The notes beneath the pieces are model-generated. The model was not told the DNA's origin, searched no databases, and saw nothing but the letters and a program-made list of their open reading frames with translations. DNA of 64,000 nt from Octopus sinensis (Eukaryota): positions 94,364,001 to 94,428,000 of the forward strand of contig NC_043001.1 of the NCBI RefSeq assembly GCF_006345805.1. Direction: 5' to 3'. Positions 23,708-56,350 of the stretch are shown piece by piece. The position numbers were made by a program, and so were the translations under genes. Every line of letters begins with the position of its first letter. The first letter of the stretch is position 1.

Positions 23708-24087
23708 TATACATATATAATACATACATGTACATATATGCACTTCCTTCGATAAAGTGATATACCATAAATATTTTATTGCCGTGAGAATAACACATTT
23801 AATATCCGGTGCTTAATTTAGGATAGTCATAATTGTATTATGATGAATTCAGATTGAGTAACTACTGCTTGCATCTTACACTCAAATTCTGTTAAATAAA
23901 TCCGTGTTTATTTCAAAATCAAAAATGCATTAATATCACATACTCTGAAAAATTACACTAGCATTCAAATTAATTATAACAATCGCAAATGAGGTAGAAG
24001 CAATATCTAGAACAACAATGGAGATTATTACCTCTGGATATTATGAAACATGATCTCCGAAAGTGCTCAGAGAAGCTATGTATAATA

Positions 24088-24644
24088 CGATGGTGAGTCA
24101 ATATGTAATGCCATTTTGGTTTGGAAAAGAATAATTACCAGCACAGGAACATGTATCATACATCAAAATAAAGCTGGTCCTCTGTGGATTACATCCTTAC
24201 TTCTCGACATAGTCATCGTTTCTCTCAATAGCAATGTTCAATCTTCGAATGAGAGCATGTATCCCTACCCCTGTAAAATTCTGTTGAGTTTTCTTTGAGC
24301 CACTTCTTCACTACAGTTTTCACTTCCTCGTCACTGGAATAACGTTTGCCTCTCAAACCCTCTTTCGTGGCGCCGATGTGATGATGGTCTGACGGCGCTA
24401 AATCTGGTGCGTGTGGAGGTAGTGAAGAAGTGGCTCAAAGAACAATCAACAAGATTTTACGGGGCAGGGATACATGCTCTCATTCGAAGGTGGAACATTG
24501 CTATTGAGAGAAACAATGACTATGTTGAGAAGCAGGGATGTGATCCACAGAGGACTAACTTCATTTTGATGTATGTTACATGTTACTGTTTTGGTAATTA
24601 TACTTGTCCTAAACAAAATAGCATTACTTTTTCACTCACTCTCG
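24088..24644. mobile_element. Mariner-derived element built from two inverted 3' ends, TA-flanked
   Basis: Minus strand: PPHAPDLAPSDHHHIGATKEGLRGKRYSSDEEVK; plus strand: VVKKWLKEQSTRFYGAGIHALIRRWNIAIERNNDYVEK; TA at 24086-87 and 24645-46. Confidence 0.85.
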
Positions 24645-24769
24645 TAGAATTAAATAAGTTACAGACATGCTAATATTATAAGTAGCTAACTCGGAGAGCG
24701 GGCAAAATCTTATCACCCCGGCCAAGATTCTTAACGGCATTTCGACGGTCTTTACGTTGTAATTTCAAA

Positions 24770-35915: not shown

Positions 35916-36760
35916 AGAATATTAGTAATAAACGTATGATTAATTCAGAACTATGATTTATTAGATATATTTATTATTCTTATATCAATGAGCATTTTTC
36001 TTTATTTTGTTCAATTGTTATTTTTTATTATTTTCTATTCTTTGACTTAATAAATAATTATAGTAATTCAATAATGAAAATACATAGAATAATTTAATGG
36101 CTTACAATTAGCTGATATATATGTCATAATCATTTACTGTTGGAGGGCTGCATGAACTCAAGTAAAGGAAATTTAGATAAAATATTGGAAATTGAGATCA
36201 AGGAAATGCTTAGATGTTAAAATCAATGCTCGATATAAATTAGTGTTTAAATGCAAGTACTTAAATATGACCTAAATAATAGAAATAATAATTTAGCCAT
36301 TAGCGCAGAGAACACATACTTTGAAGAACAGTGAAATATATTTAAAAGAGAAAATTAAAAACATCATAATTGAAAGCACAAGAGATTGAAAATATCAAAG
36401 AGAAATGACATTTTGCTAGGCATAAAATCGGGATTGGATATTAATGTAATTTCTAGAGGGGGTACAAATGCAGAAGAGTAATTAATAAGAATACTATTTA
36501 GAGATGAAAAAAAACAATGGAGAATTATTCGTTATACACTGGTTTGTACTATTTTGAAAAGATTATGAAACGACGAACAGTCAGGGTATTTAGGTTATCG
36601 GATAAATATCATAAGGTATTTGCTCCAGCGCATTATATTCTGCTAAAATTATAGTAAAGTTACCTTTACGTTGCTTCATTTTTGAGTCTATATAACTATC
36701 TACATGTTCAAACTTGTCATTGATATTGTTAGATTTTTAGTAGAAACTATGACATTACAA

Positions 36761-36935
36761 CCAGCCAGGCAAAGTCTTCGCTACCTTTGCGGCACCTGCC
36801 AGAGGGAGTGTTTGTCCTGGATAGGACTACACAGCCATAGCAGGAGATGTATTAGGACATGAAATGTAAAAGCCGGACTAGATTATTTTATGCGCAACTC
36901 CATTGTCTCCCGAGACCATAAGGATGTCAACAACA
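36761..36935 (+). mobile_element. RTE-type LINE extreme 3' end
   Basis: YLCGTCQRECLSWIGLHSHSRRC matches the C-terminal zinc-finger-like motif of RTE ORFs, followed by a short UTR CCATTGTCTCCCGAGAC..GGATG and AAC repeats. Confidence 0.7.
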
Positions 36936-38136
36936 ATAATTGTTAGATTTTTTTTAGGAGAATGACGTTATTTCTTGAAGTAATTTGCGTTCTAATAAGG
37001 ATGAGTGGGGACGTGTAATTGCACTTGTCTGTTATCAGTTACGTTGAGGCCTTTCACGCAAGAACGTATAAGGTATATAACCCGAAACTACTATAAACTA
37101 TATGAAATACAGAGAGAACGTACTACTGAAACTACAATTGTTGGCTAGTTTAACACATGGGCGAGAAAGGTGGAACACTGGAAGGAAAGAAACGTAAGAG
37201 AGAAGGAAAAAAGTAAGAGCCTCCGCTGTTGTAATTGCTGAAGTTTCCTAGGTCAGTTAAAGTTAAAATAACGGACAGCCGCACCAGAAATAAACTAACA
37301 CACTTAGACTGTTATAGGAATATATGAAAGTATTGAGGGAATTCAAACATGGCAGTGCTCATGATACTTTTACAGGCATCTAGAAACGTTCGAAAACATA
37401 CATTGACGCAAAGAACACTTTCTGAGAACAGACGCAAACATCGATACAATTCAGAGGTGAGGCCAATGAAGATGCATTATACCGCATGTGAAGTTAATAA
37501 ATCTAAACAGTATTCAGTACGTAACTCATATAAATATTGCGGAAAGTAAATCATATGCGCAATTCTCGTTTAGCGACCCTTTGAACAGATGCCTTCAAAT
37601 TTATCATTTATTAAGAGCGGAAAAACAGAATTTAAGCATCGCTGTTTTATAACAATAATGTCAAATGTCATAAAACAAATTTATAAATACAAAGGTATCA
37701 TTGTCTTTACTGAAAATGAAGAAAACATCGTGTATAATCATTCACATGATTATACATGTGAGTACTAGTATTATGAAGGAGAAAGATGCTAGCGTATATC
37801 AGGATATGAAGTTGTCAAGCGTAAAATTGAAATTTGTGGACGTGATAGAATACGAAATAAATATCAGTATTATTAGCATATACATGAATGATATATATGT
37901 AAGAAATATTTTCCCTAGGATATGAAAAGCAACTCTCAAATTACACTTCTAAATATGACCATGTAGAAGACAGTAAGAATATAGCGAAGATTGTTGAGAT
38001 GCAAGGTATACTGGAAATTAATTTATCATGAATGCCCTGCGAGGCAATATTGCAACTTGTAATTCAATATAGAATGTTTATGATAGTTTCCTAAATCTCA
38101 ATAATGGTGACGACGATGGCGATGGTGATTATGATG

Positions 38137-38183
<47 letters not shown>

Positions 38184-38461
38184 TAATAATAATAATGATA
38201 AGGATGATGATGATGATAGTAATAATTTCTATTTTTTGCCATAGGGACGTCTATTGAGAAGGACAGGACAAGGACAGTTTACATTTTATGTAGGCATTTA
38301 CAGGAACAGATGCGGTGGAATGTGTGAGCGAGGGTGAGAGCTGAGATTAAATGTATCTATAATATACATGATCTCAATAATAATAACTATGATAATAATA
38401 ATAATAATAATAACAACAACAACAATAATAATAATAATGATAATATTAGTGATGATAATGG

Positions 38462-38504
<43 letters not shown>

Positions 38505-38529
38505 AATAATAATAATAATGATGATGATG

Positions 38530-38610
<81 letters not shown>

Positions 38611-39140
38611 TGACCTCATGCAGTACCAGGCAGTGGCTCTCATGGCTTCTGAACTTAACTGATGAGAAGTATTATCATGTATATTGTTTTGTGTTGGTAC
38701 AAAAGATGGGCTACATCAAATATTCTGCTTAATACCATAGATTTGCTTGTCAGTTGTTTGACAGTAACCGGTTGAGCATGTCCCTTAGTATCTGACGATA
38801 TGTGCATCTCTGATTACATGCAGAAATAGTGGGGAAGTATCATAGCCGTGTGAAAAGAATTCTTAGAGGTTTGGATAATTCACCTCTGGAAACATGGGTG
38901 TTTCGTTGAGCATTCTAAAACAACCCTTATTCAGGGACCTTTTAAGCGACCAGGAGGAAATTCTAACTGGGCCCCACCTGCAAGGCCTTCAGATCTTTAT
39001 CTTGATATGAGTTCACCATGTCGTGGTTGAGATGCATGTGCCTAGTGTACTCTTATCAGACGGGTAGTCATGATGGGTATACTGGGCTTTGTATATTTTA
39101 CCCCAGTGTCACTTTGATGGCATGCACTGCTGCCTCAGTC
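38611..39140 (+). mobile_element. Non-coding ~530-bp interspersed element embedded in an (AAT)n array
   Basis: Flanked on both sides by (AAT)n; its last ~80 bp (ACGGGTAGTCATGATGGG..GCATGCACTGCTGCCTCA) recur at 49767-49847, again followed by (AAT)n. Confidence 0.75.
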
Positions 39141-39147
39141 AATAATA

Positions 39148-40690
<1,543 letters not shown>

Positions 40691-40714
40691 ATAATAATAA
40701 TAATAATAATAATG

Positions 40715-40803
<89 letters not shown>

Positions 40804-40919
40804 GATGAGGGTGGTGGTGGTGGTGGTGGTGGCGTTGGTGGTAGTGTTGGTGGTGGTGTTGGTGGTGGTGTTGGTGGTGGTGTTGGTGGTGGTGATGGTG
40901 GTGATGGTGGTGGTGATGG

Positions 40920-40974
<55 letters not shown>

Positions 40975-43278
40975 AATAATGCATGTAACTGATGTGTGTA
41001 CCGAGAACAGCATATTAGTAACTATACATTTGCGCAACTTTATCTCTTCAAATTCATATTCCAAATTCCTGTATTGTTTACATAAACATCTGTCATAGAA
41101 TGATTTAGAAAAAAATTAATTTATTTCCACTTGTTTGTTGTACGCCAGACTTAAATATCGCTGATATATCAAATTGCCTGTCTGAAATGGAATCTCTATT
41201 TGTGTACTATTTTTTCGTTTGCCATTACGGCAATTTCAAAACTATTTTCGCTTCCATATCCATGTTCATATGCCAGTCTCAATATAGATAATCATATGTT
41301 TTACTTATAATTTGTACTATAATGCTCTCTCTATCTCTCTTAGCAGATATTTATATGTATATAACTGAAAATGCCAAAATTGATACATTCTATCTCACTT
41401 TACAATAGAACGGATGAAAGGCTACGCTTACTATAATATATTGGTATTGAAATAAGCAAAACGGCAAGTAAACATCGAGGTACTTTCAGTAAAATCACCT
41501 GAAGAGGGGCATCTCCACGTAAAATTGCTGACAATTGATAGAATCGTATCTCATATCTAAGGTACGGATGCATGGTGAGTCAAAACATTCTACTTCTGAC
41601 TAAGGAGTCTGGTGAATTTCATTTTTTGCCCCTCAACTTTTTATATAAACTTTACGGGTACAAATTAATTCTTAAATACGCTGGAATATAACTCTATATT
41701 GTTGTTGACATTAGGTGACCGAATACGGTGGACACGCTTTAAGAATCACACTACAATCTATCTACCTCTGTATATTACTGCACACACATACACACTCACA
41801 CACACACACGTATAAATTAACAGAAATAGCTTTTTGTAATGTTAAACCGTTAAGTAAAATTATAGTCGTTAACTAAACGCAAATAAAGGTGTCAAGACAC
41901 CTACATTGCTAGAAATAAGAGCTAAAATGTTCTACCACATAACATATATTCTAATGGGGGCTGCAATCGCCCCGAATACCAAACAGAGAATTCCATTCCC
42001 TAGACTGACTTAGCAGTTTCATCTCTTTCAGTAGTCATCGTCAGTAAGGCCAGCTTTTCGGTTGATTCCGGGTTACCTCGGCTATCAAATTATCGGGTAA
42101 TCTCTCCAGTTTGTAAATATATATTCACTGTGTATCTAGAAGCGGCGTTTTGAGCATCTTATTCGCATACAGGATATCTAAATATATTTTTTATGAATTA
42201 TCCTTTATAGCTGAATTCGGCTCGCAATATTCTGTCCATCAATACAAACATGTTTGTGTGTGCAGACATGTGTGTTTGTACATGTCTCGTTGTGAGTGCA
42301 TGTAATAACGAATATAAACTTTAATAATGACTGATGTGAATAACGAAATAGCTTATAATCAATATAACGTTCAGTAAAATAACCACCGTATATTTAACTA
42401 TTGGTGGATATGGTGCTTTCGTGTTCCATAAAAATACTTCAGTAACTGCATTTCGCGGGTTGGCCTAATGAATGCGAATAATTTTAATATTTAGCTCGAA
42501 AATGGCTTCAAACGTATAGATATATATATATATACATATGAAAGGGGTGTTTGCTAAATTTTTCTTGAGAACATTTAGTGGTAAGACCATAGCGGATCTA
42601 CTTCTAGCATAAGGGTTGTCCCTCTCATATGTATATAATACAATTTAATGAACCTTCAGATTTTAATATGCTAGAACACTGGTGTTAAGTTGATGCTAAT
42701 TAAATCAATATCCAATTTCTCACCCTCATTTTAAATTTAGATATACCTATGTATTCAGGACCGAAGAATTGGGATGCCTTATTGTTATTTACAACCAATA
42801 AAGCCAAAGTATCAATGATTTCTTATTCATTCTGCTAGAAATGGAATCCGAATTTTTGTCATAGCCTGTTCAATGTAATATAATCCAATCTAAGTGATAT
42901 ATGGGGAAGCCGATATGGACATGGTTAGGACGCCTTTTATGATATCTGCACTGTCAAGAGCATAGCAGTGTCTAAAATATAACATTAACAATATTGTACA
43001 GTTTACAAGTTGTTCAATAACCTAGCTTAAATATTATTTGTGGTGATATACTGGTAAATCAATAGGAATTCAATAGGTTGTACGGAAAATTGTTAAAGGA
43101 ATACATTTTCAGTGAAATGAAACAAAGTCTAAGAATAATGGAAGTCGTAAATTTCAATATGGATCTCGAGCAAATATTAGAAGTAAGATTCGTTGTGATA
43201 TTTAAGTAAATACAGGTACAACGTAACCTACAGACATGGCTACAGGAACGTGAAATATCCGTTTATAACGCTGTACGT

Positions 43279-43608
43279 GAAGGCGCATAGCTCAGTGATA
43301 AGCGCGTCGGGCTCACAGTCATGTGGTAGTGAGTTCGATTCCTGGACCGGCTTGTGAGTTCTTGACCAAGACATTTTATTTCACGTTTCTTCAGTTCATT
43401 CAGCTGTAGAAATGAATTAAGACGTCTCTGGTGCCAAGCTGTATCAGCCTTTGCCTTTCCCTTTTCCTTGGATATGATTGGTGGCTTGAAAGGAGGAGAC
43501 TGGTATGCACGGGTGACTGCTGGGCTTCCATAGCCAAACATGCCTGGGAGGGGTACTTCCTAGTTGCAATCCCATGGTCATTCATGACCAAAGGGGATCT
43601 TTACTTTT
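43279..43608 (+). mobile_element. tRNA-derived SINE, family C (CORE-like centre)
   Basis: GGCGCATAGCTCAGTGATAAG (A box), GAGTTCGATTCC (B box), central TTGACCAAGACATTTTATTTCACG..CAGCTGTAGAAATG; CORE assignment is inference. Confidence 0.8.
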
Positions 43609-43984
43609 TTAAACTCTGTACAGAATTATGCATTCATGTGTAAAGTATTACCTGTGTTTTACAGTGAACATTGTACATATATTTATAAAAATGCATACAC
43701 ATTTGTGTGGATGCGTGTGTACATGTTTCTGTATGCTTGTGTGCAACTTTATATATGTATATGTAGTAGAAAATGCGTGTACAAACAGATCTATGATTGT
43801 TAAAATTACATTTAGCTAACCACTTAGATAACCATAATGCTGTGTGCCTCCAGCAGAGCTGTTAAGTAACTCCTATGCAGCGCATAAACAATTTGTGTAT
43901 ATTTTTATATATATATATATCAATAAACATATAGATCTATCTATCTATCTAACTATGATATTTATATTTCTTGTTTTTCTTTTC

Positions 43985-44830
<846 letters not shown>

Positions 44831-44846
44831 TATATATATATATATA

Positions 44847-44882
<36 letters not shown>

Positions 44883-45645
44883 GCACACACACACACACGC
44901 ACACATATATATATATATATATGCATGAATGTATCTATCTGTTTATATAGAGATGTGTGTATGTTTGAAAAATTAACTAATGAAATATTAAAATATATAT
45001 TTATGAGCTTCAATGCAGTTCTTTTTTTCAGAAATATTATATATTCGCAATAATCATATCAACACTTTAAACTTGGACATCTACTCTCGGTAGCGATCGG
45101 CTTATGTACATTCTAAATATGATTTTTGTTTAATGCTTTTGCCTATATGGATGCATTGCAATCTAGGTTATTGTACCTTTGTTATACTTGGGACGCTCAT
45201 AAGCTTTATCCTACGTCATTCTCATTTATCGATATCTACACTCATATTTCACACTTATAAATTAGTACGCTGCTAGTGAATGATTTTTTTTTTCCAATCG
45301 ATTCAGGACATTTAATAATTCAAGGCGTTTTTAAGAATGTTTGAATATGGTGAGTCTTGCACGTAGAAATTTTTATTTTCTACATACTTTTTATACTTAT
45401 CATTAACTTAGTAAATATTCAAATAATATCTTTAGTAAATAAACGATTCTACGCCTCTAGGAAATATGGCTCCGTTTTGAAATATTGGAAAGTTAAGTAT
45501 GCTGGATGATTTAATACCAAACTTATATTAATTCATATTTCTAAGAAAAGGTGTTTACATTTCTCTTATACATTTCATTTAATGGATTTCTGGATAATAT
45601 TCTCTCCACATCCGACAAATATTTTCCTCCCGCAAACCTATCTCT

Positions 45646-45975
45646 GATAGAATTGCACTGAGTTTACTTTATGTTTATATCGCATTTTCATTTGGTTATT
45701 GCTTGCTACGGCATTCCTGGACATCGCCACGTATAAGTGTTATATATATAGAGAATACCAAACGAGTTCCCTATGGAATCCGTATTTATTACAACTCGCT
45801 CGTTAGATACGTTTACAAGCCACGAGTTGTAATAAATACGGATTCCATAGGGAACTCGTTTGGTATTCTCTATATATATAACACTTATACGTGGCGATGT
45901 ACAGGAATGCCGTAGCAAGCAATAACCAAATGAAAATGCGATGTAAACATAAAGTAAACTCAGCGCAATTCTATC
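45646..45975. repeat. 330-bp near-perfect palindrome P1
   Basis: Arms 45646-45798 and 45823-45975 (153 bp, 3 mismatches counted by eye), 24-nt spacer CTCGTTAGATACGTTTACAAGCCA. Confidence 0.95.
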
Positions 45976-46340
45976 TTTTACAGTTACACATTGTGACGTC
46001 ACTGACGTGAAATCAAGCTGTATTCATGCGCGCTTCAACACGATGTGAAGAATTTAGTTATTGGGTTAATAAAATATGGTCGTTTATTCGTGTGTAATAA
46101 ATAAAATACCAAACTCATTCCCTATGGAAACCGTATTTATTACAACTCGTGGCTTGTAAACGTATCTAACGAGCGAAAGCGAAACGTATAGGGAATGAGT
46201 CTGGTATTTTATTTATTACACACGAATAAACGACCATATTTTATTAACCCAATAACTAAATTCTTCACATCGTGTTGAAGCGCGCATGAATACAGCTTGA
46301 TTTCACGTCAGTGACGTCACAATGTGTAACTGTAAAAGAT
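45973..46340. repeat. 368-bp near-perfect palindrome P2
   Basis: Arms 45973-46125 and 46188-46340 (153 bp); the 62-nt centre contains the reverse complement of the P1 spacer. Confidence 0.95.
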
Positions 46341-46341
46341 G

Positions 46342-46530
46342 TCATGCCGCAGGAAGATAGTCCGACTTTGTTAACCTGTATCCAGCAACATGTCGAACTT
46401 GGCCAGTATTGATCTTCACTTTGAACATTCTGTATGTTCCAAGAGGTTGAACAACGGATAACACTCTTCCCCCATCTTTACCATCAATCTTAACAAAATC
46501 ATTCACCTTGATATCGACAACAGTAGCCAT
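46342..46530 (-). CDS. 62-aa ORF, predicted small beta-barrel (SH3/Tudor/KOW-like), probably element-encoded
   Basis: MATVVDIKVNDFVKIDGKDGGRVLSVVQPLGTYRMFKVKINTGQVRHVAGYRLTKSDYLPAA; ATG in CAAGATGGC context; complex, non-repetitive composition; stop lies 1 nt from the P2 boundary. Confidence 0.55.
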   Translation of the reverse strand: MATVVDIKVNDFVKIDGKDGGRVLSVVQPLGTYRMFKVKINTGQVRHVAGYRLTKSDYLPAA

Positions 46531-46889
46531 CTTGTTGATAGATCTACCTGCATTGCAAGAGTATCGACGAGCAGACGAAATATGTTGTGATTTTTTTGGC
46601 AACAAAAAATTGAATTACCACCAGTAATGTTTGTATTTTATGTGTATATAACTTTAAGTGATATCTGGTATAAAAAGATAGTATGTTTGTTTAATTACAT
46701 GGCTACATTCTACCTGCTCGTAAAAGTAATGAATGAAGTCTAGTTGTAACTTATGAATGACAAAAGTAGTGCCGTCACCGTGACCTCGGGTCATCACTAT
46801 GGATTGACCAATCAGAAGCAGCGATCGCAGTATCTGACATATGTTAGATACCAAAAATATCTCAAAGTGTTCTCACTCACATGTGTGTA

Positions 46890-46929
<40 letters not shown>

Positions 46930-47670
46930 GTATATATAAATGGATGAATGAATTATCATTGTTCACAGTTAACACGGAAAATTCAATAAGCAGTTACCAG
47001 GGTGTCAACATTCACGCAAGTAACAAGGATGTAGCGGTCTGTTAAAAGGTAGAAACTCCGGGTTAATGTGCAGTAATTAGTATAGTATAAGTAAATAAAT
47101 GGAGTTGAACGCAGATGTTATTAAAATTATTTTACTTGCGTCATATGTTTCGAAGACAACATTGGTTTTATTCCAAAGGAATAAACGGTGTAAAATAATG
47201 TAATCTTCTCATCAGGAAAGAAAGAGAACCTATTTTAACAAGAAGACATTATAACAATTTTGATGACAGCATAAATGATAAACCGAACTCTATTAAGTAT
47301 TTAAATCGAAAACCGTTAGTAGATCTGATGTCAAAGGCAGGAAGAGAAGGGATAAAGAAATAATAAGTAGCGAACAAATAGAGAGGGATATATTGGTTGA
47401 AAAAAATGTTCAAAGGCTTGGAAGCAGATTTCTCTATTGAAGTAAAGTTCGAGGTGAACTAAATGTTCAAACTATACAGACTGTTATAAATCACTTATGT
47501 GAGCTAAAGGTATGTTTCTGCCAGTGCTAATATTTGTAAGATCGCTCTATAATTGTGTTAACTAGGTGATTCTTAGAGAAGAAAATATGGAAGAGTTCAG
47601 AGTTGCAAATGTTACAAAATCCTTTGCCTTTGAATAACACCTGCGTTAGACTACATTTATTTAGTTATGC

Positions 47671-47704
<34 letters not shown>

Positions 47705-47734
47705 ATATATATATATTAAGGTATGTAGAAGAAT

Positions 47735-48230
47735 ACAACATGGACAAGAACATATAACTCTTAGAAGACGATACAATAAACATGGACAGGACATTCGAAC
47801 CCCTCAGTCTTCAGTCAAGAACCGGATCATCGTAGTAATTTCGGCTGATTAATCTTGAGATTACTAGATCACGGCCAGCCCTCCAAGAAAAACTAACCAA
47901 CGAGCATTAGAAAAACTAAGCTGGAAGCGTAGATTTCCTGGAAGAAGGATCGAATGCATACGAACACCAGGACAGCAAAAGGGACAGATATAAAAAAAAC
48001 AAAAAACAATAATGGAATACAGAAACATGAAATACAGAAGCATTAACGGTGAAAACAACAAGTGTCTTACGACTGATAACAAGCAAACAAATTTTTTCTC
48101 TGGCGCATTGGAAGAAGCCTTTATAGCGGCGGACGAAAAACAACGATGTTAACACGACGAGGGTCAGGAGCTGAAAGGCAGATTTCGGCCAACAGTCACG
48201 TGACAGAGAAGAGGGAAAAGAAAAGAAAGA
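47735..48230. repeat. Interspersed repeat, possibly Penelope-LTR-derived
   Basis: Shares its first ~80 bp with 19045-19126; purine-rich body ending in GTCACGTGAC; class assignment is inference. Confidence 0.5.
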
Positions 48231-48514
48231 GAAGCAAAGGAAGAGAGAGAGAGAGGAGGGACAAACGCAACAAAGAGAGAGAAGAGAGAGAAAGAAGGAA
48301 TCAGAGAGGAGAAGGGATGGGTGTCGAAGAATGACCTGTGAGTGCAGAGCGAGACAAAGAAATAGGAGGGTAGTGGAAGACTAGACCAAAGGATCAGAGG
48401 AAAGAGAAGAGAAAAAGAGGATGAGTAGAGAGAAAAGAGAGAGAGGGGGACAGATTAAGTAAAAATGAGAGAGAGAGAGAGACAAACAGAGAGTCGTACC
48501 AATTATTATATATA

Positions 48515-48564
<50 letters not shown>

Positions 48565-49003
48565 TATATAGTACATGTGTTTTTGTATAGTAATATTTGT
48601 AAAATTTATTACACTCTATGTTAGTTTATTTTACACATCTAATCAAAAGACAAAAGCAGCAATTTGTTAATTTGAGTAGAAAAGAAACCACAACTCGTCA
48701 TTTGACTTATTACAGCCTAGTGCTACGAAAATTTGTAAAATCCACAAATCCATTAGAAATTTCCTAAGCTCAGATTATAATTACAAACTACGTCACTGGA
48801 TTAGGTCAGCAATAACAAAATAGGTAAAATGTCTTTCTTATAATTTAAACTTCCTGATCGAAGGCAACATTAAAAAAGTAACATCATATATATCGCACCA
48901 TCAGCCAAAACCAAAGTCATTAGATTGAGAGGCAATAGCTATTGTTTCAGTGTAATTAGTTATACGAAGAGTTTAGTGTAGGTATGGTTACACTTAAATC
49001 CAG

Positions 49004-49072
<69 letters not shown>

Positions 49073-49085
49073 TAATAATAATAAT

Positions 49086-49478
49086 CATGAAGAAAAAAAA
49101 TGCTTTCTAATTGATGTATCATTACCGGCAGATGACAACGTGTCTCTAAAAGAAATGGAGAAACTTTCAAAATACAAAGACCTGGAAATAGAGGTAACCA
49201 GAATGTGGAATCTAAAAACAGAAACAATTCCTATCATAGTAGGTGCATTAGGCATGATAAAAAAATATTCAGACAAATACATAACAAAAAAAACAGGACT
49301 TACAAACACATATAACATACAGAAAATTGCACTACTAGGCACTGCGCACATCTTACGCAAAACACTTTCCATACAATAACCATCAGAGCATCACACCAAA
49401 TCACAGCACATACCCAAGGCACACAGAGCTGCGCTCGGTAGTGAAGTGAAAGCACGCTATAAAAAATAAAACTACTGA
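49086..49478 (+). mobile_element. R4/Dong-like element, 5'-truncated 3' end inserted in (AAT)n
   Basis: KKCFLIDVSLPADDNVSLKEMEKLSKYKDLEIEVTRMWNLKTETIPIIVGALG..LLGTAHILRKTLSIQ*; 3' UTR nearly the same as 40605-40690. Confidence 0.9.
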
Positions 49479-49766
49479 ATAATAATAATATTAATAATAA
49501 TAATAATAATATTAATAATAATAATGATAATAATATGAATAAAAAGAAGAAGAAGAAGAAGAACAACAACAACAACAATAACAACAAGATATAATTAGAG
49601 GCCACATGCATTGGATTCATGAATGTCAACACAAATATTCTGAACTTCTGAAAACAGTCCGACAGAATTATTACATATCAATTTCAAATTTTGAGAAACA
49701 GTGTCTATTTCTATAATCTGTAACAAACACGCATATAGACTCAATCATATGCGTGTAAGTCATGAT

Positions 49767-49847
49767 ACGGGTAGTCATGATGGGTAAACTGGGCTTCGTA
49801 TATTTTACCTCGGTGTTACTTTGATGGCATGCACTGCTGCCTCACTC
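49767..49847 (+). mobile_element. 3' fragment of the 38611-39140 element
   Basis: Near-identical last ~80 bp followed by (AAT)n. Confidence 0.8.
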
Positions 49848-49917
49848 AATAATAATAATGATAATAATGATGATGATAATAATAATAATAATGATAATAT
49901 TAATGATAATAATAATA

Positions 49918-49952
<35 letters not shown>

Positions 49953-50036
49953 TATTATTATTATTATTATTATTGTTATTATTATTATTATTATTACTAT
50001 TATCATCATTATATTATTATTATTATCATTATCATT

Positions 50037-50099
<63 letters not shown>

Positions 50100-50680
50100 C
50101 GTTTGTAACACTGTGTAGGTAAAAATACACCGGAGTCTTTCGTCATCAGTCAAGTGACAACAAAAACCTCAAACATATTTTCGCGAAGATGTGGACAATA
50201 ACGCTGCTTTTTGTAAGACATGAATCTTTGCACGGGATTTCCAGTTGCCTGAAGAAGATTCAATGGGGATTGTGCCCACTGGTATCACATTTCCATTACC
50301 GTCTCGCATTCCATACAGTCTTGTCATTTCCACTTTCAACTCGGATTCGGGATTTTTTCAACCTCTTCTCTCACAGAATTCATGACAAATAGTATAATCT
50401 ATAGTAATGATCTGACAGTATTTGTCTCTCTCTATTCAATAAGACAATATCCGGCCGGCGGTGTTCGATTACACGATCCGTTTGCAAATCATAGTCCCAG
50501 AGTATCTTTACTTTTCCATCCTCCAGCATAACTTTAGTTGCTACATGTTCATACCAGTTCTCTGTTACTTCACATGGGTTTTTACGGCATAAGAGCCAAC
50601 GAAGATACCCAGACATTTTATCGTGACGGCGTTTGTATTTTTTGTTTGCAAGTCTCTCTCATCCACTTATCAAGTAGGTC
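50100..50680 (-). mobile_element. Second, more diverged R4/Dong-like RLE fragment with 3' UTR
   Basis: KKYKRRHDK..LRWLLC..WYEH..KILWDYDLQTDRVIEHRRPDIVLLN; bounded by (ATT)n on both sides. Confidence 0.8.
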
Positions 50681-50681
50681 A

Positions 50682-50718
<37 letters not shown>

Positions 50719-50890
50719 GTTTTGTTTTTGTTGTTGTTCTTCTTCTTCTTCTTCTTCTTTTTATTATTATTATATTATTATTATATTTTTTATTTTTATT
50801 ATTGCTATTATTATTATTATTATTATTATTATATTATTATTATTATTATTATTATTGTTTTTATTATTATTATTGTTATTATTATTATTA

Positions 50891-50957
<67 letters not shown>

Positions 50958-51027
50958 TATTATTATTATTGTTTTGTTTTTGTTGTTGTTCTTCTTCTTC
51001 TTTTTATTATTACTATTATCATTATTA

Positions 51028-51080
<53 letters not shown>

Positions 51081-51200
51081 GCTATTATTATTATTATAAT
51101 AATAATTATTATTATTATTATTGTTTTTATTATTATTGTAATTATTATAATAATATAATAATAATAATAATAATAATAATTATTATTATTATTATTATAA
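50682..51200. repeat. (ATT)n array with an internal ~250-bp duplication
   Basis: Interruption TGTTTTGTTTTTGTTGTTGTTCTTCTTCTTC occurs at ~50718 and ~50970. Confidence 0.85.
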
Positions 51201-51847
51201 AACCCAAATATCTTTGTGAATCACAACTCCCCAGAGATTCCTGGCCGAAATATTTACTTTTTCGTAATTCATCTATCTGTGAAAAAAAAAAGAAAAGAAA
51301 AGGGAAAACGGTTCAGCGTGACTCTGCTCTCGATGCTGCATACAAAATATTTTCTATGCACCTTCCTTAAAGTATTGATTAACTTTCATACTCTGCCTTA
51401 CTCTGTTTCTGTTCAGCTTTTCTCAGTAGCGAGTGCCAACAACTATGACTGACGAAATTCCCCGGCAATTTTGTTTTACTAACTCTCTACTTCACTTCAT
51501 TCTCTGTCACTGACAAATGATGTCTTGACGTCTGTTGTCCTTTTAAAGATGTCCTTGGGGCTAAAGAATGTGTTATGTATATAGCTAGTTATAGAAAACT
51601 AAGGCTTAACTAATGAGTTGCATTCATAAAGCCTCTATAATAGTCTAGTTAATCCGCTGTTTTCAGTGCATTCTGGTATATTATTGTTTGCGGCTAATTT
51701 CTATTAAAGAGTTGAAATACCCCGAGCTCGACTGTGAGATCTGCATCTACATTCCTATTATCTCACGCACAAGCCTTGCTGTAAAATATTCCTGGTAATT
51801 TTCACCTCTACATTACGAACTGAAATACGTATTCTAAAGTTAGTTGT

Positions 51848-52136
51848 GCAAGCGCAATGGCCCGGTGGTTAGGGCAGCGGTCTCGCGGTCGGAGGATCGC
51901 GATTTCAATTCCCAGACCGGGCGTTGTGTGTGTTTATTGAGATAAAACACCTAAAGCTCCACGGGGCTCCAAGAGTGGGTGGTGGCGACCCCTGTTGTAT
52001 TCTTTCAACCCAACTTTCTGTCACTCTTTCTTCCTACTTGTTGGGTAATGCTGCGATAGACATACCCCACAGAAACCGGTAAGCCGGGCCCATGAGCATG
52101 GCTAGGCTTGAAAAGGATGCTTAAGGAAATAATAAC
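51848..52136 (+). mobile_element. tRNA-derived SINE, family D
   Basis: TGGCCCGGTGGTTAGG (A box), degenerate B box GATTTCAATTCCC, unrelated body and an AAT-like tail. Confidence 0.7.
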
Positions 52137-54669
52137 GTTAGTTATAAACATGCATATTGGTTTCCAACATAGGTACAAAGCTAGGAATTCTGAGAGAGGT
52201 CTAAGTCGATTACGCCCTGTATGCAATCACTGGATTTCATACATTTTATTTTCGTCTGTCTGAATGTTTCCCTGTGCATATATTATATACTTTTGTAGAG
52301 AAAGAAGAAGAAAAACAAAGAAGTAAAATGGATCTTGTTTTTTGCTCGCAACATCTTTTGCTCCCAAGTTTATTAAATATTCATTCCATGAACATAAATA
52401 GAACAGAATTTTTCAGTAGAATCTATAATTATTTTAAAATCCATGACTTAGAAGAATAAAAATACGTTGAATTCAACGATCCTGAGGGCAATGATGATGA
52501 TGATGATGATGACGACGACGACGACCACGTGAGGATGGTGTGGTGATGGTGGTAGTGATAATGAGTATGACTACTTGCACACAGTACTCACCCATATATT
52601 GTACAACAGACCGTGTGTTCAATCTGACTTCTGTACTTACCAGAAATTTATGTTATCGTACAGGATACATTTGTATTTGAACTTGCAGCATAAAGTATCA
52701 TATCATATGTTATAAATAATTAACCCCTCAGAATCTTCCCTCAATAATAATTTGGAGCAATACCACAAGGATATGAAGGATAGCATATATGAGTAACTGG
52801 ACGCTAATCCTGGGTCAACGCTTTCTTTTTCATCTCCAATAGGATAAAACCGACAGAAAACCATGTCGGATTAGATCCTACTGAGCAGATGCTTGCATGT
52901 TAGCATCAACGCCATGACATGTCTGAACTGATGCACATTACCAATATGAATGGCAAAAATTTATTATTGAAATGTGTATAATTCAGTCATAAATTGCTCC
53001 TTTATTACATTCCACAATGGTCGTCGCTTATATTCATCAGTACAAAAATTCAAAAATCTTGTATTCTGTTGACAACTTGTAAGAGTTACACTAACAATAT
53101 TTCACTAATTGTGATAATAGAAGATTGAAAACAGTCACGTCTCTAACCATCGCGATAAATGCCATCATACAGGTTCTATGCAATTAATTATAAATCCAAA
53201 TTCGTTAAAAATAGATTTACAGAACTATCGATTATAAAGTAGCATGTGACAATAACTTGACTAAACGAAAACGAATTTGAAATGAACGTTTAACGCTTTG
53301 TGTCTGAAAATGATCTTCATCTGTAACAACAAATAATAAAACAATAAAGCGATTAGAAGAAAGACACGAACAAGAATCGCTACCAGATTAAAAGTCAAGC
53401 ACAATCGATTACAAGACGAAACAATCGATAAGCACGCAAACACAAATATATACATGTATTAATTAGACATCTTTTGAAACACACACAAAATTAATTACAC
53501 ACACATACACTGAGAGAAAGGCACAGACAGAATGAATATTACATTCACGCACACAGATACACAGACACTCATACATATGGATAAAGATATAGATATAGTT
53601 GCGTGTACATTCTACGTAGAATGTATGGTTATATAATGTTTTCAAAATATATGCTAGAAATAAAAGAGGTGAATAAAAAATATTCGATTGAAAAGTTTAA
53701 TCCTTTAATGTATAAAGCTTAGTATAATCTTTTAATGTATCTCCTTGCAACCATAATTGCATACACCATAGTAACATTTAACAAGAGCCGATTCTTTATC
53801 TCTTTGTTGCTCTTGAAAACTCATAGATAAAACGGCAGTAAACTATGAAAATTGAAAAAGAAAAGTTAAACAAGTAGAAGAAAAATTTAAATGTAAATAT
53901 GACGAACAAACAAGAAAAGAAGTAAAATTAAGAATTCTGAAGTTTCTACACTTTAAGTTCATTTAGATATCACGTGATTTAACATTAGAAATCGATTATC
54001 GATTTTGTGCGAGTTTAATTTTCTTCTAGATTTTATATTTTTTTGTATTATTTATTTTGTAACTTATTTTTGTGCGTTTGCAAAATCTCTTCTTAACTAT
54101 AAAGTTCTCTGACCTAAATGATTGTGAATATGCTAGATTCGAAAAATACGAAATCCAGAAGCAAAAGAAGAGATGAAAAATATCTGAATCCTAATATAAC
54201 AGGAAGGAAAACGTTAACCGTGATAACGAATACTGTATGTCTAGTATTTATATTCTATGTTCAGCCAGTTTAGGAGATTGCATCATTCATATACATGAAT
54301 AATTCAAACCAGCTTCATAGAAGTATGGAAATATACAGGTATTGTAGTATTAATCGATCGGATGTGATGTAGAATATTTAAATGGGCAAGTATAGAAACA
54401 GACGTATCACATACATTACTTGAATATCTTGTCTATTTCTAACAATTGGGTAAATTTTTAAGCCGAAGAAAGCATCAAATGATGAAATAGTTTATTTCAT
54501 ATCATTTGCTATTGTATTACGTTTAGGATTATAAAAGTTACACTTACAAATACCACAAAATTTTAATTTAAATTTCATAATCCTAGTGCTACAAAGGTCT
54601 CGCATTTATACCACCTGTTCTAATATAAAGCAAATATTACAAGAGAATAATTTATTCACATACATTTAT

Positions 54670-55013
54670 TTCTACCGAAATTCTGGGGGAGAGGACCTGC
54701 TCGTTCGACTGACTCTAGTATGCAACTGGTACTTATTTTATCGATCCCGAAAGGATGAAAGGCAATATCGACCTTGGTGGAATTTGAACTCAGAGCATAA
54801 AGACAAACAAAATACCTATTTCTTTACTACCCACAAGGAGCTATACACAGAGAGGACAAACAAGGACATAATAAAGGATCAAGTCGATTACATCCCGAAA
54901 GGATGAAAGACAAAGTCGACCTCGGCGTAATTTGAAATCAGAACGTAGCGGCAGACGAAATACCGCTAAGCATTTCGCCCGGCGTGCTAACGTTTCTACC
55001 AGCTCGTCTTCTT
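54670..55013 (-). mobile_element. Two adjacent SINE family B copies
   Basis: GAAAGGATGAAAG..GTCGACCT..AATTTGAA occurs twice (~54745 and ~54900); the head GAGCTGGTAGAAACG (rc) is present at 54990-55013. Confidence 0.85.
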
Positions 55014-55704
55014 AATGTATTCGCATACATTATTATAAGTAAATAAGATCTTTACTTAATTGTTAATTTCCTTCATCTTAGGCATATCTAACTACATTAT
55101 TTAAGCTTTAATACATATTGTAGATAGATATTTTGGCATCGAATTTGATTCTCTCAAATACTTGATATGTTAAAATATATAACTATATCCGATTTTCGAA
55201 TCAATAGTAACGGTTACATGTTATTCATAAAACAGAAGATTAAAATGATTTAGCGCATTCATTCAACATAATTTCAAGTCCCGAGATATGTCGTGCTGAC
55301 GTGTCCATAAGAAGGACGAAACAGTACTATTAAGAACTACCAGCGACTTTAAGAAATTTGTCCCATGGAAATGATCAAAAATAATTATATAGCAACATGT
55401 TTATGTTTCCCATTGTTTAATGCAATTTATAAATTTCACAACATGCTTAAAGCTTAAAGCAAGAAGGGATTCTCTCACTTTCGGTAGCAGCAGCAGTCAC
55501 ACATGTGTGTAATTATCACGTTCACTAGAAGAACAAAATTGCTTCTGTTGACAGTAGAATTCATATTTTTCACCTCAGTGAATACTACAGAAAGATTCCA
55601 TTATTGCGTAAAATATATCATTTGAGGTCTAACAAGAACTAATCTGTGTTTTCTTCGTGCGTTACAACATAATTTTATATGTAAAAACCTAAATTTTACA
55701 TGTA

Positions 55705-55758
55705 AAACCGCTTCCTCCTAATCTCCTTCCTCCACCTCCCCTTCCTCCCCTTCTCATC

Positions 55759-55814
<56 letters not shown>

Positions 55815-55900
55815 TCTTCTTCTACTACTACTGTTGCTGTTGCTATTGTTACCATTGTTATTAATGCTGCTGGTGCTTCTACTGCTTCTGGTTCTTCAGC
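55705..55900. repeat. (CCT)n/(ACT)n compound microsatellite
   Basis: Direct reading. Confidence 0.85.
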
Positions 55901-56350
55901 TGTGATCACTGCCACGACAGGACACTTTCCCATCCCCACTGTGCCTGCTGTAGCTACTTACGAAAAGAAACATCACAAAAAGACTACCACCTCCTCTGTC
56001 ACTTCTAAAAATAATATGTCACGACTACTAAGACTATGTCACTACAGCTGTTGCTACTGCTACTAGCACTGCCAAATCTACCATTCCGGCTTCCGTTACT
56101 AATACTTCCACTACTTCGTTATTTGATACCATTGAATACTTTCGTCTAAGAACATACATGGTGGTCACTGATCTCTGAAAAATTATCCTAAACTAATATT
56201 TCAACTTGGGAAATCTTCTGAAATATAAAGATTTAACTTATTATTCATTTTCTTTTCGCATTGCTATAAAGGCTCTACTTAATTTTGATTAGAATATCAC
56301 GTATCCTTCAGATAACTAGACATCTTTATAAATATTTGTGTTATTCATAT

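What the first reader, a model, noticed from the sequence alone, without database searches (positions are those of the whole stretch)
45646..46340. Twin giant palindromes with a shared core and flip/flop spacers
Seen: P1 and P2 abut, each with 153-bp arms. Their outer arm sequences are unrelated, but both converge on AATACCAAAC...TTCCCTATGGAA.CCGTATTTATTACAACTCG. The P1 spacer CTCGTTAGATACGTTTACAAGCCA appears as its exact reverse complement in P2, followed by CGAAAGCGAAACG. Nothing else in the window has this organisation. Inverted binding arms around an asymmetric spacer is the layout of tyrosine-recombinase sites, and flip/flop loops mark hairpin-end replication (established). Which mechanism applies here, if either, is inference.
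Basis: partly seen in the sequence, partly recalled or inferred. Interest (0 to 1): 0.8.

Follow-up and report, generated by a model that had tools for sequence, protein, structure and literature searches.

The report
Transposon hairpin duplicated into twin palindromes
Two abutting 330- and 368-bp palindromes in an octopus genome are a one-off rearrangement of the end hairpin of a Crypton (tyrosine-recombinase) transposon; that hairpin is conserved as far as a snail and may be the unknown recombination site of these transposons.

Summary
In detail: P1 (45646-45975) and P2 (45973-46340) have 153-nt arms, a shared core and a 24-nt piece in opposite orientations.

The same locus in the Octopus vulgaris reference (L004) carries everything once: host flank A, a ~150-nt imperfect hairpin K, then segment B'. 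The window therefore equals that monomer plus a 351-nt block (45799-46149). The block is two 177-nt inverted copies, of [A + left arm] and of [right arm + B'], joined through 3 shared bases. Part of each new centre is also missing. The "spacer" is a leftover of K's inner arm.

K is not a free-standing site. It is the 3'-terminal hairpin of a ~2.4-kb Crypton-like transposon encoding a QRICH1/DUF3504/Phage_integrase recombinase, and the window holds an internally deleted copy. Tip orientation is the same in all five octopus copies that keep the tip and in Littorina, so flip/flop is not a family trait.

Most likely mechanism (inferred): a strand swap at the hairpin (replication U-turn or cruciform cutting), a microhomology join, then centre deletions. 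An assembly artefact is not excluded (~0.1).

By-product: the hairpin, with an inverted copy of the 5'-terminal 12-mer at its inner base, is conserved with 32 compensatory pairs across Octopus, an unnamed relative and Littorina. The layout resembles integron attC sites.

The parts
45646..45747 (.). Segment A: host DNA flanking the transposon (outer part of the left arm of P1). Its inner end (about 45737-45747) is the copy-specific direct repeat that resembles the element's 5' terminal motif.
   Evidence: Present once, next to the hairpin, at the orthologous O. vulgaris locus L004. Absent from the paralogue L003 and from all full-length copies.
45748..46890 (-). Whole non-autonomous Crypton-like element (sense on the minus strand), including the rearranged hairpin. 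About 0.84 kb in unrearranged copies.
   Evidence: L003 against L004: 92.6% over 846 nt. Both ends match the ~2.4-kb full-length copies L005-L010 and the middle is missing. Termini.
45748..45798 (.). Conserved 3' end of the element (ATAGAG on the + strand) followed by the left arm of hairpin K ('cL' type). Inner part of the P1 left arm.
   Evidence: Alignments A1 and A3. Carries GAG at 45764-45766 and T at 45779, the left-arm states.
45799..46149 (.). 351-nt block absent from the ancestral monomer: two 177-nt inverted copies that overlap by 3 nt.
   Evidence: Piecewise alignment A1 against L004. Lengths.
45799..45975 (.). Inverted copy 1: reverse complement of [A + left arm + inner arm]. The rest is the right arm of P1.
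   Evidence: The reverse complement aligns end to end with L004 from the start of A to the end of the inner arm. 150/153 matches to the left arm against 143-144 to the ortholog.
45973..45975 (.). Junction of the two inverted copies: ATC is shared by the end of copy 1 and the start of copy 2 (3-nt microhomology).
   Evidence: Read directly and compared with the L004 flanks.
45973..46149 (.). Inverted copy 2: reverse complement of [right arm of K + element segment B']. Left arm of P2. Contains the inverted 12-mer at 46090-46101.
   Evidence: Alignment A1. Carries, as reverse complement, the state GGTTTCC that is specific to the right arm at this locus and shared with L004. B is 121/121 identical to B'.
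46150..46182 (.). Inner arm of K plus the intact asymmetric tip (GAGCGAAAGCGA), in the same orientation as in every other copy.
   Evidence: Identical over 33 nt to L009, L010 and L003. The tip contains GCGAAAGC, a motif of the DNA 'mini-hairpin' class (PMC13037366).
46183..46189 (.). Scar of the centre deletion in P2. About 40-46 nt (second inner arm plus the inner part of the right arm) are missing. The few filler bases make AAACGTAT (46182-46189), which repeats 46158-46165.
   Evidence: Gap in alignment A1. Sequence.
46188..46340 (.). Right arm of P2: the original outer part of K's right arm, the inverted copy of the 5'-terminal 12-mer (TTTATTACACAC, 46212-46223), and element segment B' with two TGACGTCA motifs.
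   Evidence: Collinear with L004, L003 and L005-L010.
46342..46530 (-). Remnant of the tyrosine-recombinase gene. It is broken once, by one large internal deletion that leaves only about a tenth of the coding sequence.
   Evidence: 96% identical to the start of P0003 (497 aa; QRICH1, DUF3504, Phage_integrase).
46531..46890 (-). 5' part of the element: untranslated, promoter-like region and the 5' terminal motif (about 46883-46890, here partly replaced by target-like AT repeats).
   Evidence: 95% identical to the 5' parts of the full-length copies. End defined.

Best explanation
SHOWN. The twin palindromes are one derived, local rearrangement at the terminal hairpin (K) of an internally deleted Crypton-like transposon.
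- The ancestral arrangement survives at the same locus in the O. vulgaris reference: host flank A, then K, then element segment B'. K is left arm, inner arm, GAAA-type tip, inner arm, right arm.
- The window has that arrangement plus a 351-nt block inside K. The block is two 177-nt inverted copies, one of [A + left arm + inner arm] and one of [right arm + B'].
- The two copies are joined at their far ends through 3 shared bases.
- Each new palindrome has then lost part of its centre.

INFERRED mechanism.
1. A strand swap occurred at the hairpin. Either a nascent strand made a U-turn between the two complementary arms and later turned back, or the extruded cruciform was cut into two hairpin-capped ends.
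2. One microhomology join linked the two inverted stretches.
3. Centre deletions followed, which are frequent in this hairpin.

The 24-nt 'spacer' of P1 is the surviving inner arm. The opposite orientation in P2 follows from the two centres deriving from opposite sides and strands of K. Host replication or repair suffices. The element's recombinase is not required.
For: - Ortholog. L004 is collinear with the window over 36000-56000 and holds the monomer.
- Mapping. Every window piece maps on that monomer, in the orientation stated (A1).
- Arm types. Both P1 arms carry left-arm states. Both P2 arms carry right-arm states, including a state specific to this locus and shared with L004.
- Tip. P2 keeps inner arm plus tip intact in the family orientation over 33 nt. 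That fits an intrastrand (cruciform or U-turn) origin and not closure of a broken duplex end.
- Junction. ATC is shared at 45973-45975. No target-site duplications flank either palindrome.
- Polarity. The paralogue L003 and three full-length copies have a complete K, which neither window palindrome retains. The derived state GGAATCC sits in both P1 arms, against GGATACC in L004, L003 and 6 others.
- Age. Arms differ at 3/153 and 1/153 positions, against 8-9 and 2-3 differences from the ortholog. Pooled window-L004 substitution divergence is 2.1%.
- Fragile centre. 5 of 8 other octopus copies carry independent centre deletions. One identical deletion arose twice: L005 and L007 share it, while L009, the ortholog of L005, is complete.
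- Literature. Cruciform resolution gives two-ended hairpin-capped breaks and inverted dimers (PMC8053094). Palindrome-centred inverted duplications are described in PMC3315005. [quoted passage not shown] Centre-break revision of palindromes is Cunningham 2003, as cited in PMC3300023.
Against: - The window's structure rests on a single assembly. No reads could be examined.
- Three switches, or two nicks at about 150-200 nt from the hairpin tips, are needed, and nothing fixes where they fell.
- The exact equality of the two inverted copies (177 and 177 nt) is unexplained by the model.
- The strand-of-origin argument for P1 rests on only 2-3 bases. The one for P2 rests on 12-13 bases.
- The state of the left arm/inner arm border in the window's own ancestor is unknown, because L004 has a small deletion there.
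- Intact recombinase genes of the same family exist in these genomes. An enzyme-triggered break therefore cannot be excluded.
Confidence: 0.6

Rival explanations
1. Recombinase-triggered version. The Crypton tyrosine recombinase, supplied by intact copies elsewhere in the genome, bound the hairpin and cut or resolved its extruded cruciform. That gave the two hairpin-capped ends. Host repair then produced the join and the centre losses.
For: - K lies about 9 nt from the element's 3' junction. It is conserved with the recombinase across Octopus, L011 and Littorina.
- Uninterrupted recombinase ORFs of 497-522 aa with invariant R, HxxR, H and Y exist in O. sinensis and O. vulgaris.
- A cruciform is a four-way junction, the natural substrate of tyrosine recombinases (established knowledge).
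Against: - The A'/B junction lies in host DNA and in element-internal DNA, far from any conserved motif, and uses only 3 nt of microhomology.
- None of the 9 other copies examined shows a twin structure.
- Palindromes of this size break without any dedicated enzyme (PMC8053094).
Confidence: 0.15
2. Assembly artefact. The window's source genome really has the monomer. Fold-back or chimeric long reads at a strong hairpin were built into the consensus.
For: - The only other genome available for this locus has the monomer.
- Palindromes are notoriously hard to assemble.
- The four arm differences could in principle be heterozygous sites distributed between the arms by polishing.
Against: - The structure lies in the middle of 64 kb that is collinear with the ortholog on both sides.
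- It is not a simple fold-back. It is two inverted copies with a microhomology join, plus two different centre deletions, one with a templated-looking filler.
- The arm differences are substitutions, not the indels typical of long-read error.
Confidence: 0.12
3. Break at the hairpin tip followed by fold-back priming, or hairpin closure of each duplex end (including a telomere-resolvase-like closure), then rejoining.
For: It gives two palindromes, with arms A and B and homogeneous arm types. It fits the P1 centre as well as the favoured model does (own analysis).
Against: It predicts that the P2 centre is half a tip plus its own complement. Instead, P2 keeps the complete asymmetric tip and the inner arm in the original orientation (46150-46182).
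Confidence: 0.05
4. Either these are two independent foldback/MITE insertions sharing a core, or a site of hairpin-end (rolling-hairpin) replication with flip/flop loops.
For: Long arms, a shared centre and an inverted 24-mer.
Against: - A and B' flank a single hairpin at the orthologous locus.
- A is host DNA, absent from the paralogue.
- There are no target-site duplications.
- Tip orientation is fixed in the family.
- No HUH/Rep ORF was found among ORFs of 120 aa or more.
- The viral collection has no match to the core or the 24-mer.
Confidence: 0.02

Closest known systems
Crypton DNA transposons, CryptonA/DUF3504 group (Goodwin et al. 2003; Kojima & Jurka 2011, PMC3212892; Glomhopper, PMC13465315)
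   Same: - A single intronless gene for a tyrosine recombinase with DUF3504 and the catalytic R..HxxR..H..Y.
- No long terminal repeats.
- Short, similar-looking direct repeats at both ends.
- Internally deleted non-autonomous derivatives that keep both ends.
- The only solved relative detectable by sequence is human QRICH1, a known Crypton-derived gene.
   Different: Animal Cryptons were reported to have no terminal repeats of any kind (PMC3212892). Their 'only distinguishing feature' was said to be a short direct repeat (PMC8969392). This lineage instead has a conserved ~120-150-nt imperfect hairpin about 9 nt from the 3' junction. It also has an inverted copy of the 5'-terminal 12-mer at the hairpin's inner base.
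Palindrome- or inverted-repeat-provoked inverted duplications: hairpin-capped breaks and cruciform resolution in yeast (PMC8053094), E. coli (PMC3315005), ODIRA and template switching (PMC10766183, PMC5453318)
   Same: - A pre-existing short palindrome sits at the centre.
- The new arms are inverted copies of the adjoining DNA.
- The secondary junction uses microhomology.
- The break is two-ended, so both sides become palindromes.
   Different: - The known cases give chromosome-scale inverted dimers, dicentrics or triplications.
- Here both products were trimmed to about 100-125 nt of flank and rejoined in cis. That left a 351-nt insertion, inherited in the germ line, with the ancestral allele preserved in a sister genome.
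Centre-break revision of long palindromes (Cunningham et al. 2003, cited in PMC3300023)
   Same: Asymmetric deletions confined to the centre, with short homologies at the joins. They are seen in both window palindromes and in 5 of 8 other family copies.
   Different: These are natural, evolutionary instances in a transposon hairpin, not transgenes. One identical deletion arose twice independently (L005 and L007).
Integron attC sites and their cassettes (PMC2727003, PMC5027507, PMC3458562)
   Same: - An imperfect palindrome of about 60-150 nt, recognised (in integrons) as a folded single strand by a tyrosine recombinase.
- Structure is conserved while sequence varies.
- Conserved inverted motifs sit at the base.
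- Unpaired features are kept on one strand.
- The start of the mobile unit carries the sequence that completes the base of the hairpin.
   Different: - This is a eukaryotic transposon and the recombinase is not an IntI relative beyond the generic Phage_integrase fold.
- Single-strand use, cleavage point and strand choice are untested.
- The resemblance is an inference from layout only.

Membership tests
Crypton (CryptonA/DUF3504) transposon | Encodes a tyrosine recombinase with the catalytic residues, plus DUF3504 | tested here: met
   P0003 and P0008 match QRICH1, DUF3504 and Phage_integrase above the Pfam cut-offs. R266, H394xxR397, H420 and Y429 are invariant in 8 proteins of 47-98% identity. 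The window's own copy keeps only a remnant of the gene.
Crypton (CryptonA/DUF3504) transposon | No TIRs or LTRs; short direct repeats at the termini that look alike across copies | tested here: met
   In 8 octopus copies the ~10 nt after the 3' end resemble the 5' terminal TTTATTACAC, with copy-specific variants, for example L007 and L003. Caveat: a subterminal inverted 12-mer and a hairpin are also present.
Crypton (CryptonA/DUF3504) transposon | Non-autonomous derivatives retaining both ends | tested here: met
   The window, L004 and L003 match the 5' ~0.5 kb and 3' ~0.3 kb of the full-length copies and lack the middle.
Crypton (CryptonA/DUF3504) transposon | Excision as a circle and site-specific integration | not testable with these tools
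   No read data or extrachromosomal DNA data were available.
Tyrosine-recombinase core site (lox/FRT type) | Two inverted 11-13-bp binding elements around a 6-8-bp asymmetric crossover spacer | tested here: not met
   Arms are 153 nt and the gaps are 24 and 62 nt. The 24-mer is the inner arm of a longer hairpin seen intact in L003, L009 and L010.
Hairpin-end (rolling-hairpin) replicon with flip/flop termini | Both orientations of the asymmetric loop occur among copies | tested here: not met
   The tip CGAG-CGAAAG-CGAG has the same orientation relative to the gene in L003, L004, L008, L009, L010 and Littorina L012.
Hairpin-end (rolling-hairpin) replicon with flip/flop termini | Palindromes at the ends of a linear genome with a Rep/HUH gene | tested here: not met
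   Both palindromes are internal to a chromosome region collinear with the ortholog. Pfam scans found no HUH family in window ORFs of 120 aa or more. There were no viral contigs matches.
MITE / foldback transposon | Each unit flanked by target-site duplications; arms recur as a unit at other loci | tested here: not met
   There are no direct repeats at 45646/45975 or at 45973/46340. A occurs once at the ortholog and not at the paralogue. This test is limited to the loci held.
Palindrome-provoked inverted duplication (hairpin-capped break / template-switch U-turn) | A pre-existing inverted repeat at the centre and an ancestral allele without the duplication | tested here: met
   L004 monomer with K. 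Polarity is set by L003 and the full-length copies.
Palindrome-provoked inverted duplication (hairpin-capped break / template-switch U-turn) | New arms are inverted copies of the immediately adjoining DNA; microhomology at the other junction | tested here: met
   Alignment A1. ATC overlap at 45973-45975.
Palindrome-provoked inverted duplication (hairpin-capped break / template-switch U-turn) | Hairpin-capped or U-turn intermediates | not testable with these tools
   Only the end product is visible.
attC-like folded recombination site (works-like comparison, not membership) | Structure conserved while sequence varies; conserved inverted motifs at the base | tested here: met
   65 pairs, 32 with changes on both sides, 96.4% of cells paired, 0 of 500 shuffles as high, slid controls 2-4. 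The base AGAGAATAC / GTATTCTCT is conserved. A lineage-specific 12-mer is inverted at the inner base in three lineages. Caveat: only three independent lineages.
attC-like folded recombination site (works-like comparison, not membership) | One strand is the substrate, marked by unpaired features | tested here: inconclusive
   CGAG occurs on the same strand in both arms, giving tandem G.A mismatches. GCGAAAGC lies on the strand antisense to the gene. That strand folds 3-5 kcal/mol better in all three lineages. No functional data exist.

The most novel reading that the evidence does not exclude
The conserved hairpin is the recombination site of this Crypton lineage and is used as a folded single strand. 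The site comprises the hairpin itself, the inverted 5'-terminal 12-mer at its inner base and the matching sequence at its outer base. That would be a eukaryotic counterpart of integron attC/cassette recombination. Alternatively the hairpin could be a single-strand priming signal, since its GCGAAAGC tip is the motif found at the complementary-strand priming site of phage G4 DNA (PMC13037366). Under this reading the twin palindromes are a fossil of that hairpin being extruded and cut in vivo.
Probability: 0.3. Interest if true: 0.85.

Novelty: new variant of a known kind. Interest (0 to 1): 0.6.

Why it matters
1. Palindrome breakage. The locus is a base-pair-resolved, germ-line example of what a short palindrome does when it breaks. 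Both reciprocal inverted duplications are retained side by side, and the unrearranged allele is preserved in a sister genome. Models of cruciform cutting versus replication U-turns are usually argued from chromosome-scale products.

2. Crypton biology. Cryptons are the least understood eukaryotic DNA transposons, and their recombination sites are unknown. A hairpin conserved from octopus to periwinkle was found here. It has compensatory changes, fixed asymmetric mismatches and an inverted copy of the 5' end at its base. This gives a concrete candidate site and a searchable signature for annotating these elements.

3. Instability. The same hairpin is a hotspot: 7 of the 10 octopus centres examined are altered.

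Tried and rejected
Searches that gave nothing:
- Exact-pattern scans of viral contigs with the core and the 24-mer gave no hit.
- A 19-mer scan of metagenome contigs gave two hits. Both are chance matches inside bacterial coding sequence.
- Exact look-ups of two window ORFs found nothing on record.
- Pfam on the flank ORF and 20 other window ORFs gave only LINE RT/endonuclease domains and no recombinase or HUH.
- Rfam gave nothing at gathering threshold. Below threshold there were only miRNA-precursor hits, of the kind any long hairpin attracts.
- No tRNA was found. The bacterial promoter/terminator scan is irrelevant here.

Ideas dropped:
- The flank ORF is an integrase SH3-like C-terminus. 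This was my guess from memory and it was wrong: the ORF is the recombinase N-terminus.
- The 0.84-kb repeat is a SINE/LINE-type retroposon with target-site duplications. This was replaced by a non-autonomous Crypton with Crypton-style direct repeats.
- A circularised A...B' mobile unit. A is host DNA.
- A break at the tip with duplex fold-back, or telomere-resolvase-like closure. The P2 centre contradicts both.
- An adapter-centred chimeric read. The centre is native sequence shared with other loci.

Full report
OBSERVATION. The two palindromes exist as described. P1 has arms 45646-45798 and 45823-45975 (153 nt, 3 mismatches, 24 nt between). P2 has arms 45973-46125 and 46188-46340 (153 nt, 1 mismatch, 62 nt between). 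They overlap by 3 nt. The inner 53 nt of the left arms are 87% alike. The 24-mer at 45799-45822 recurs as its exact reverse complement at 46150-46173. Neither occurs elsewhere in the window, against 0 expected by chance. The window is AT-rich and full of microsatellites, with LINE fragments, so it is an animal genome.

THE KEY COMPARISON. The ORF that abuts P2 (46342-46605, minus strand) matched two Octopus vulgaris proteins. Their loci were fetched.
- L004 (chromosome OX597818.1) is collinear with window 36000-56000. Substitution divergence is 2.1%. It is therefore the same locus in a different, closely related genome.
- At L004 the region is a monomer: host flank A, one long imperfect hairpin K, then B'.
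- On the window's + strand, K reads: left arm, CGAG, inner arm, CGAG-CGAAAG-CGAG (tip), inner arm', CGAG, right arm. It folds at -46 to -68 kcal/mol as DNA.

Piecewise alignment (A1) places every window piece on this monomer.
- 45600-45798 is flank + A + left arm.
- The reverse complement of 45799-45975 is A + left arm + inner arm.
- The reverse complement of 45973-46149 is right arm + B'.
- 46097-46400 is an arm, the inner arm and the intact tip, then a gap of about 40-46 nt, then the outer right arm, B' and the flank.

So the window equals the monomer plus a 351-nt block made of two 177-nt inverted copies. These are joined through a shared ATC. Part of each centre is also lost.

POLARITY AND AGE.
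- The complete centre is present in the paralogue L003 and in full-length copies L009 and L010. It is present in neither window palindrome. The monomer therefore cannot derive from the present twin.
- Both P1 arms carry GGAATCC, where L004, L003 and the other copies have GGATACC.
- P2's left arm carries, as reverse complement, a right-arm state specific to this locus.
- Arms differ from each other at 3 and 1 positions, but from the ortholog at 8-9 and 2-3.

The duplication therefore arose in the window's lineage after the split. It has since collected four substitutions.

WHAT K IS. An all-against-all protein search with the flank ORF found P0003 (497 aa, O. sinensis) and P0008. Both have QRICH1, DUF3504 and Phage_integrase domains. 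This is the Crypton type of tyrosine recombinase (PMC3212892).
- Full-length copies were fetched: L005 from O. sinensis and L006-L010 from O. vulgaris. They show a ~2.4-kb element.
- Its parts are the 5' end TTTATTACACAC..., one intronless gene, about 0.5 kb of 3' sequence containing B, and K about 9 nt from the 3' junction.
- Three of the six copies have uninterrupted ORFs. Three are split into two gene calls.
- The copies in the window, L004 and L003 have one large internal deletion in the gene and are non-autonomous.
- The sequence just outside the 3' end resembles the 5' terminal motif in every copy, with copy-specific variants. This matches the short direct repeats described for Cryptons (PMC8969392).
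- A lies outside the element and is host DNA.

FLIP/FLOP. The asymmetric tip has the same orientation in all five octopus copies that retain it and in Littorina. The opposite orientation of the 24-mer in P1 and P2 is a consequence of this one rearrangement. It is not a family trait.

MECHANISM (inferred). Three observations constrain it.
1. Both arms of each palindrome are of one arm type.
2. P2 keeps inner arm plus complete tip in the original orientation over 33 nt.
3. P1's inner arm is preceded by the bases expected from the opposite strand.

This fits a strand swap within the hairpin. One route is a nascent strand turning from one arm to the complementary arm and back, with a 3-nt microhomology jump between the two turns. 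The other is cutting of the extruded cruciform into two hairpin-capped ends that are opened off-centre and rejoined. It does not fit a duplex break at the tip with fold-back or covalent closure, because that predicts a symmetric half-tip in P2.

Both routes are documented for palindromes (PMC8053094, PMC3315005, PMC10766183, PMC5453318). Subsequent centre deletions are expected (centre-break revision, cited in PMC3300023) and are rife here. Five of eight other octopus copies have them, and one identical deletion arose independently twice.

The recombinase may have triggered the break. I give that version about 0.15. The A'/B junction, however, lies far from any conserved motif. An assembly artefact remains possible, at about 0.12, and only reads can settle that.

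BEYOND THE FINDING. Two distant relatives were examined: L011 (recombinase 63% identical, unnamed source) and Littorina saxatilis L012 (57% identical). Each carries a 120-150-nt hairpin 340-370 nt after the stop codon (folds).
- Conserved features are the base (AGAGAATAC / GTATTCTCT), the same-strand CGAG bubbles and, in Littorina, the identical tip.
- The tip contains GCGAAAGC, a motif of the DNA 'mini-hairpin' class (PMC13037366).
- The stems differ but stay paired. Of 65 pairs, 32 have changes on both sides, 96.4% of cells are paired, and no shuffle or slid control comes near.
- In each lineage the 5'-terminal 12-mer recurs inverted at the inner base of the hairpin.
- The strand antisense to the gene folds 3-5 kcal/mol better in all three lineages.
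- Kojima & Jurka found no terminal repeats in animal Cryptons. Neither that paper nor a 2026 CryptonA paper contains the words hairpin or palindrome.

The layout recalls integron attC sites and cassettes (PMC2727003, PMC3458562). That is an analogy, not a tested function, and it rests on three lineages only.

SLIPS, as required.
(a) Early in my reasoning I recalled a sequencing-adapter sequence from memory.
(b) Before I recognised the repeat as a mobile element, I recorded where the remnant recombinase ORF departs from the full-length protein. This is in my reasoning and in notebook entry 5. BLAST tables printed by my scripts show the bounds of the internal deletion.
(c) In my reasoning I wrote out short hypothetical centre sequences of the rearrangement intermediate by reverse-complementing observed sequence. 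None was saved, printed or searched with.

Nothing has been deleted. Consensus lines printed by the alignment tools were not used.

Noticed in passing
window 24086-24646: Inverted duplication with 186-nt arms (87% complementary) and 189 nt between them. Both arms read as the same open frame, which from memory looks like the C-terminal end of a mariner-type transposase. The unit begins TACGA... and ends ...TCGTA. Pfam gave no significant hit, so the mariner call is unconfirmed.
   Followed up: partly
window 19244-19947: Another MITE-like inverted repeat: 168-nt arms, 94% complementary, 368-nt loop. It is unrelated in sequence to the finding.
   Followed up: no
window 7756-10613 (minus strand): Non-LTR retrotransposon fragment: ORFs with RVT_1 (E 5.6e-24) and an Exo_endo_phos_2 endonuclease (E 1.6e-11).
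   Followed up: partly
L004 10001-13566 and L003 10001-11825: The O. vulgaris annotation models 'hypothetical proteins' P0001 and P0002 that start in the Crypton recombinase remnant and splice across the hairpin into flanking DNA. They are probably spurious gene models seeded by the transposon's first 50-odd codons.
   Followed up: partly
L005 (O. sinensis) versus L009 (O. vulgaris), and L007: L005 and L009 are the same full-length Crypton insertion in two species (99% identical including flanks). They differ by a centre deletion of the hairpin in L005. The unrelated copy L007 carries the identical deletion, so it arose at least twice.
   Followed up: yes
window 45799-45975 and 45973-46149: The two inverted copies are exactly the same length, 177 nt each. 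No version of the model predicts this. It may be chance, or it may reflect a unit length such as a nucleosome- or Okazaki-sized stretch.
   Followed up: no
window 45988-46008 and 46305-46325 (segment B / B'): Each B arm carries two closely spaced TGACGTCA-type palindromic motifs (CRE-like). The 5' part of the element has a CCAAT-like ATTGG and a TGACC...GGTCA palindrome (about 46780-46830). These are possible regulatory sites of the transposon.
   Followed up: no
L011 7126-7632: A PiggyBac-type DDE_Tnp_1_7 ORF lies 1.3 kb beyond the hairpin of the Crypton relative on the ENA contig. It is probably an unrelated neighbouring transposon.
   Followed up: no
window 48984-49379: ORF with a long poly-Asn run (a translated AAT microsatellite) followed by about 90 residues. 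From memory these resemble the conserved C-terminal tail seen in many invertebrate retroelement ORFs. No significant Pfam hit.
   Followed up: no
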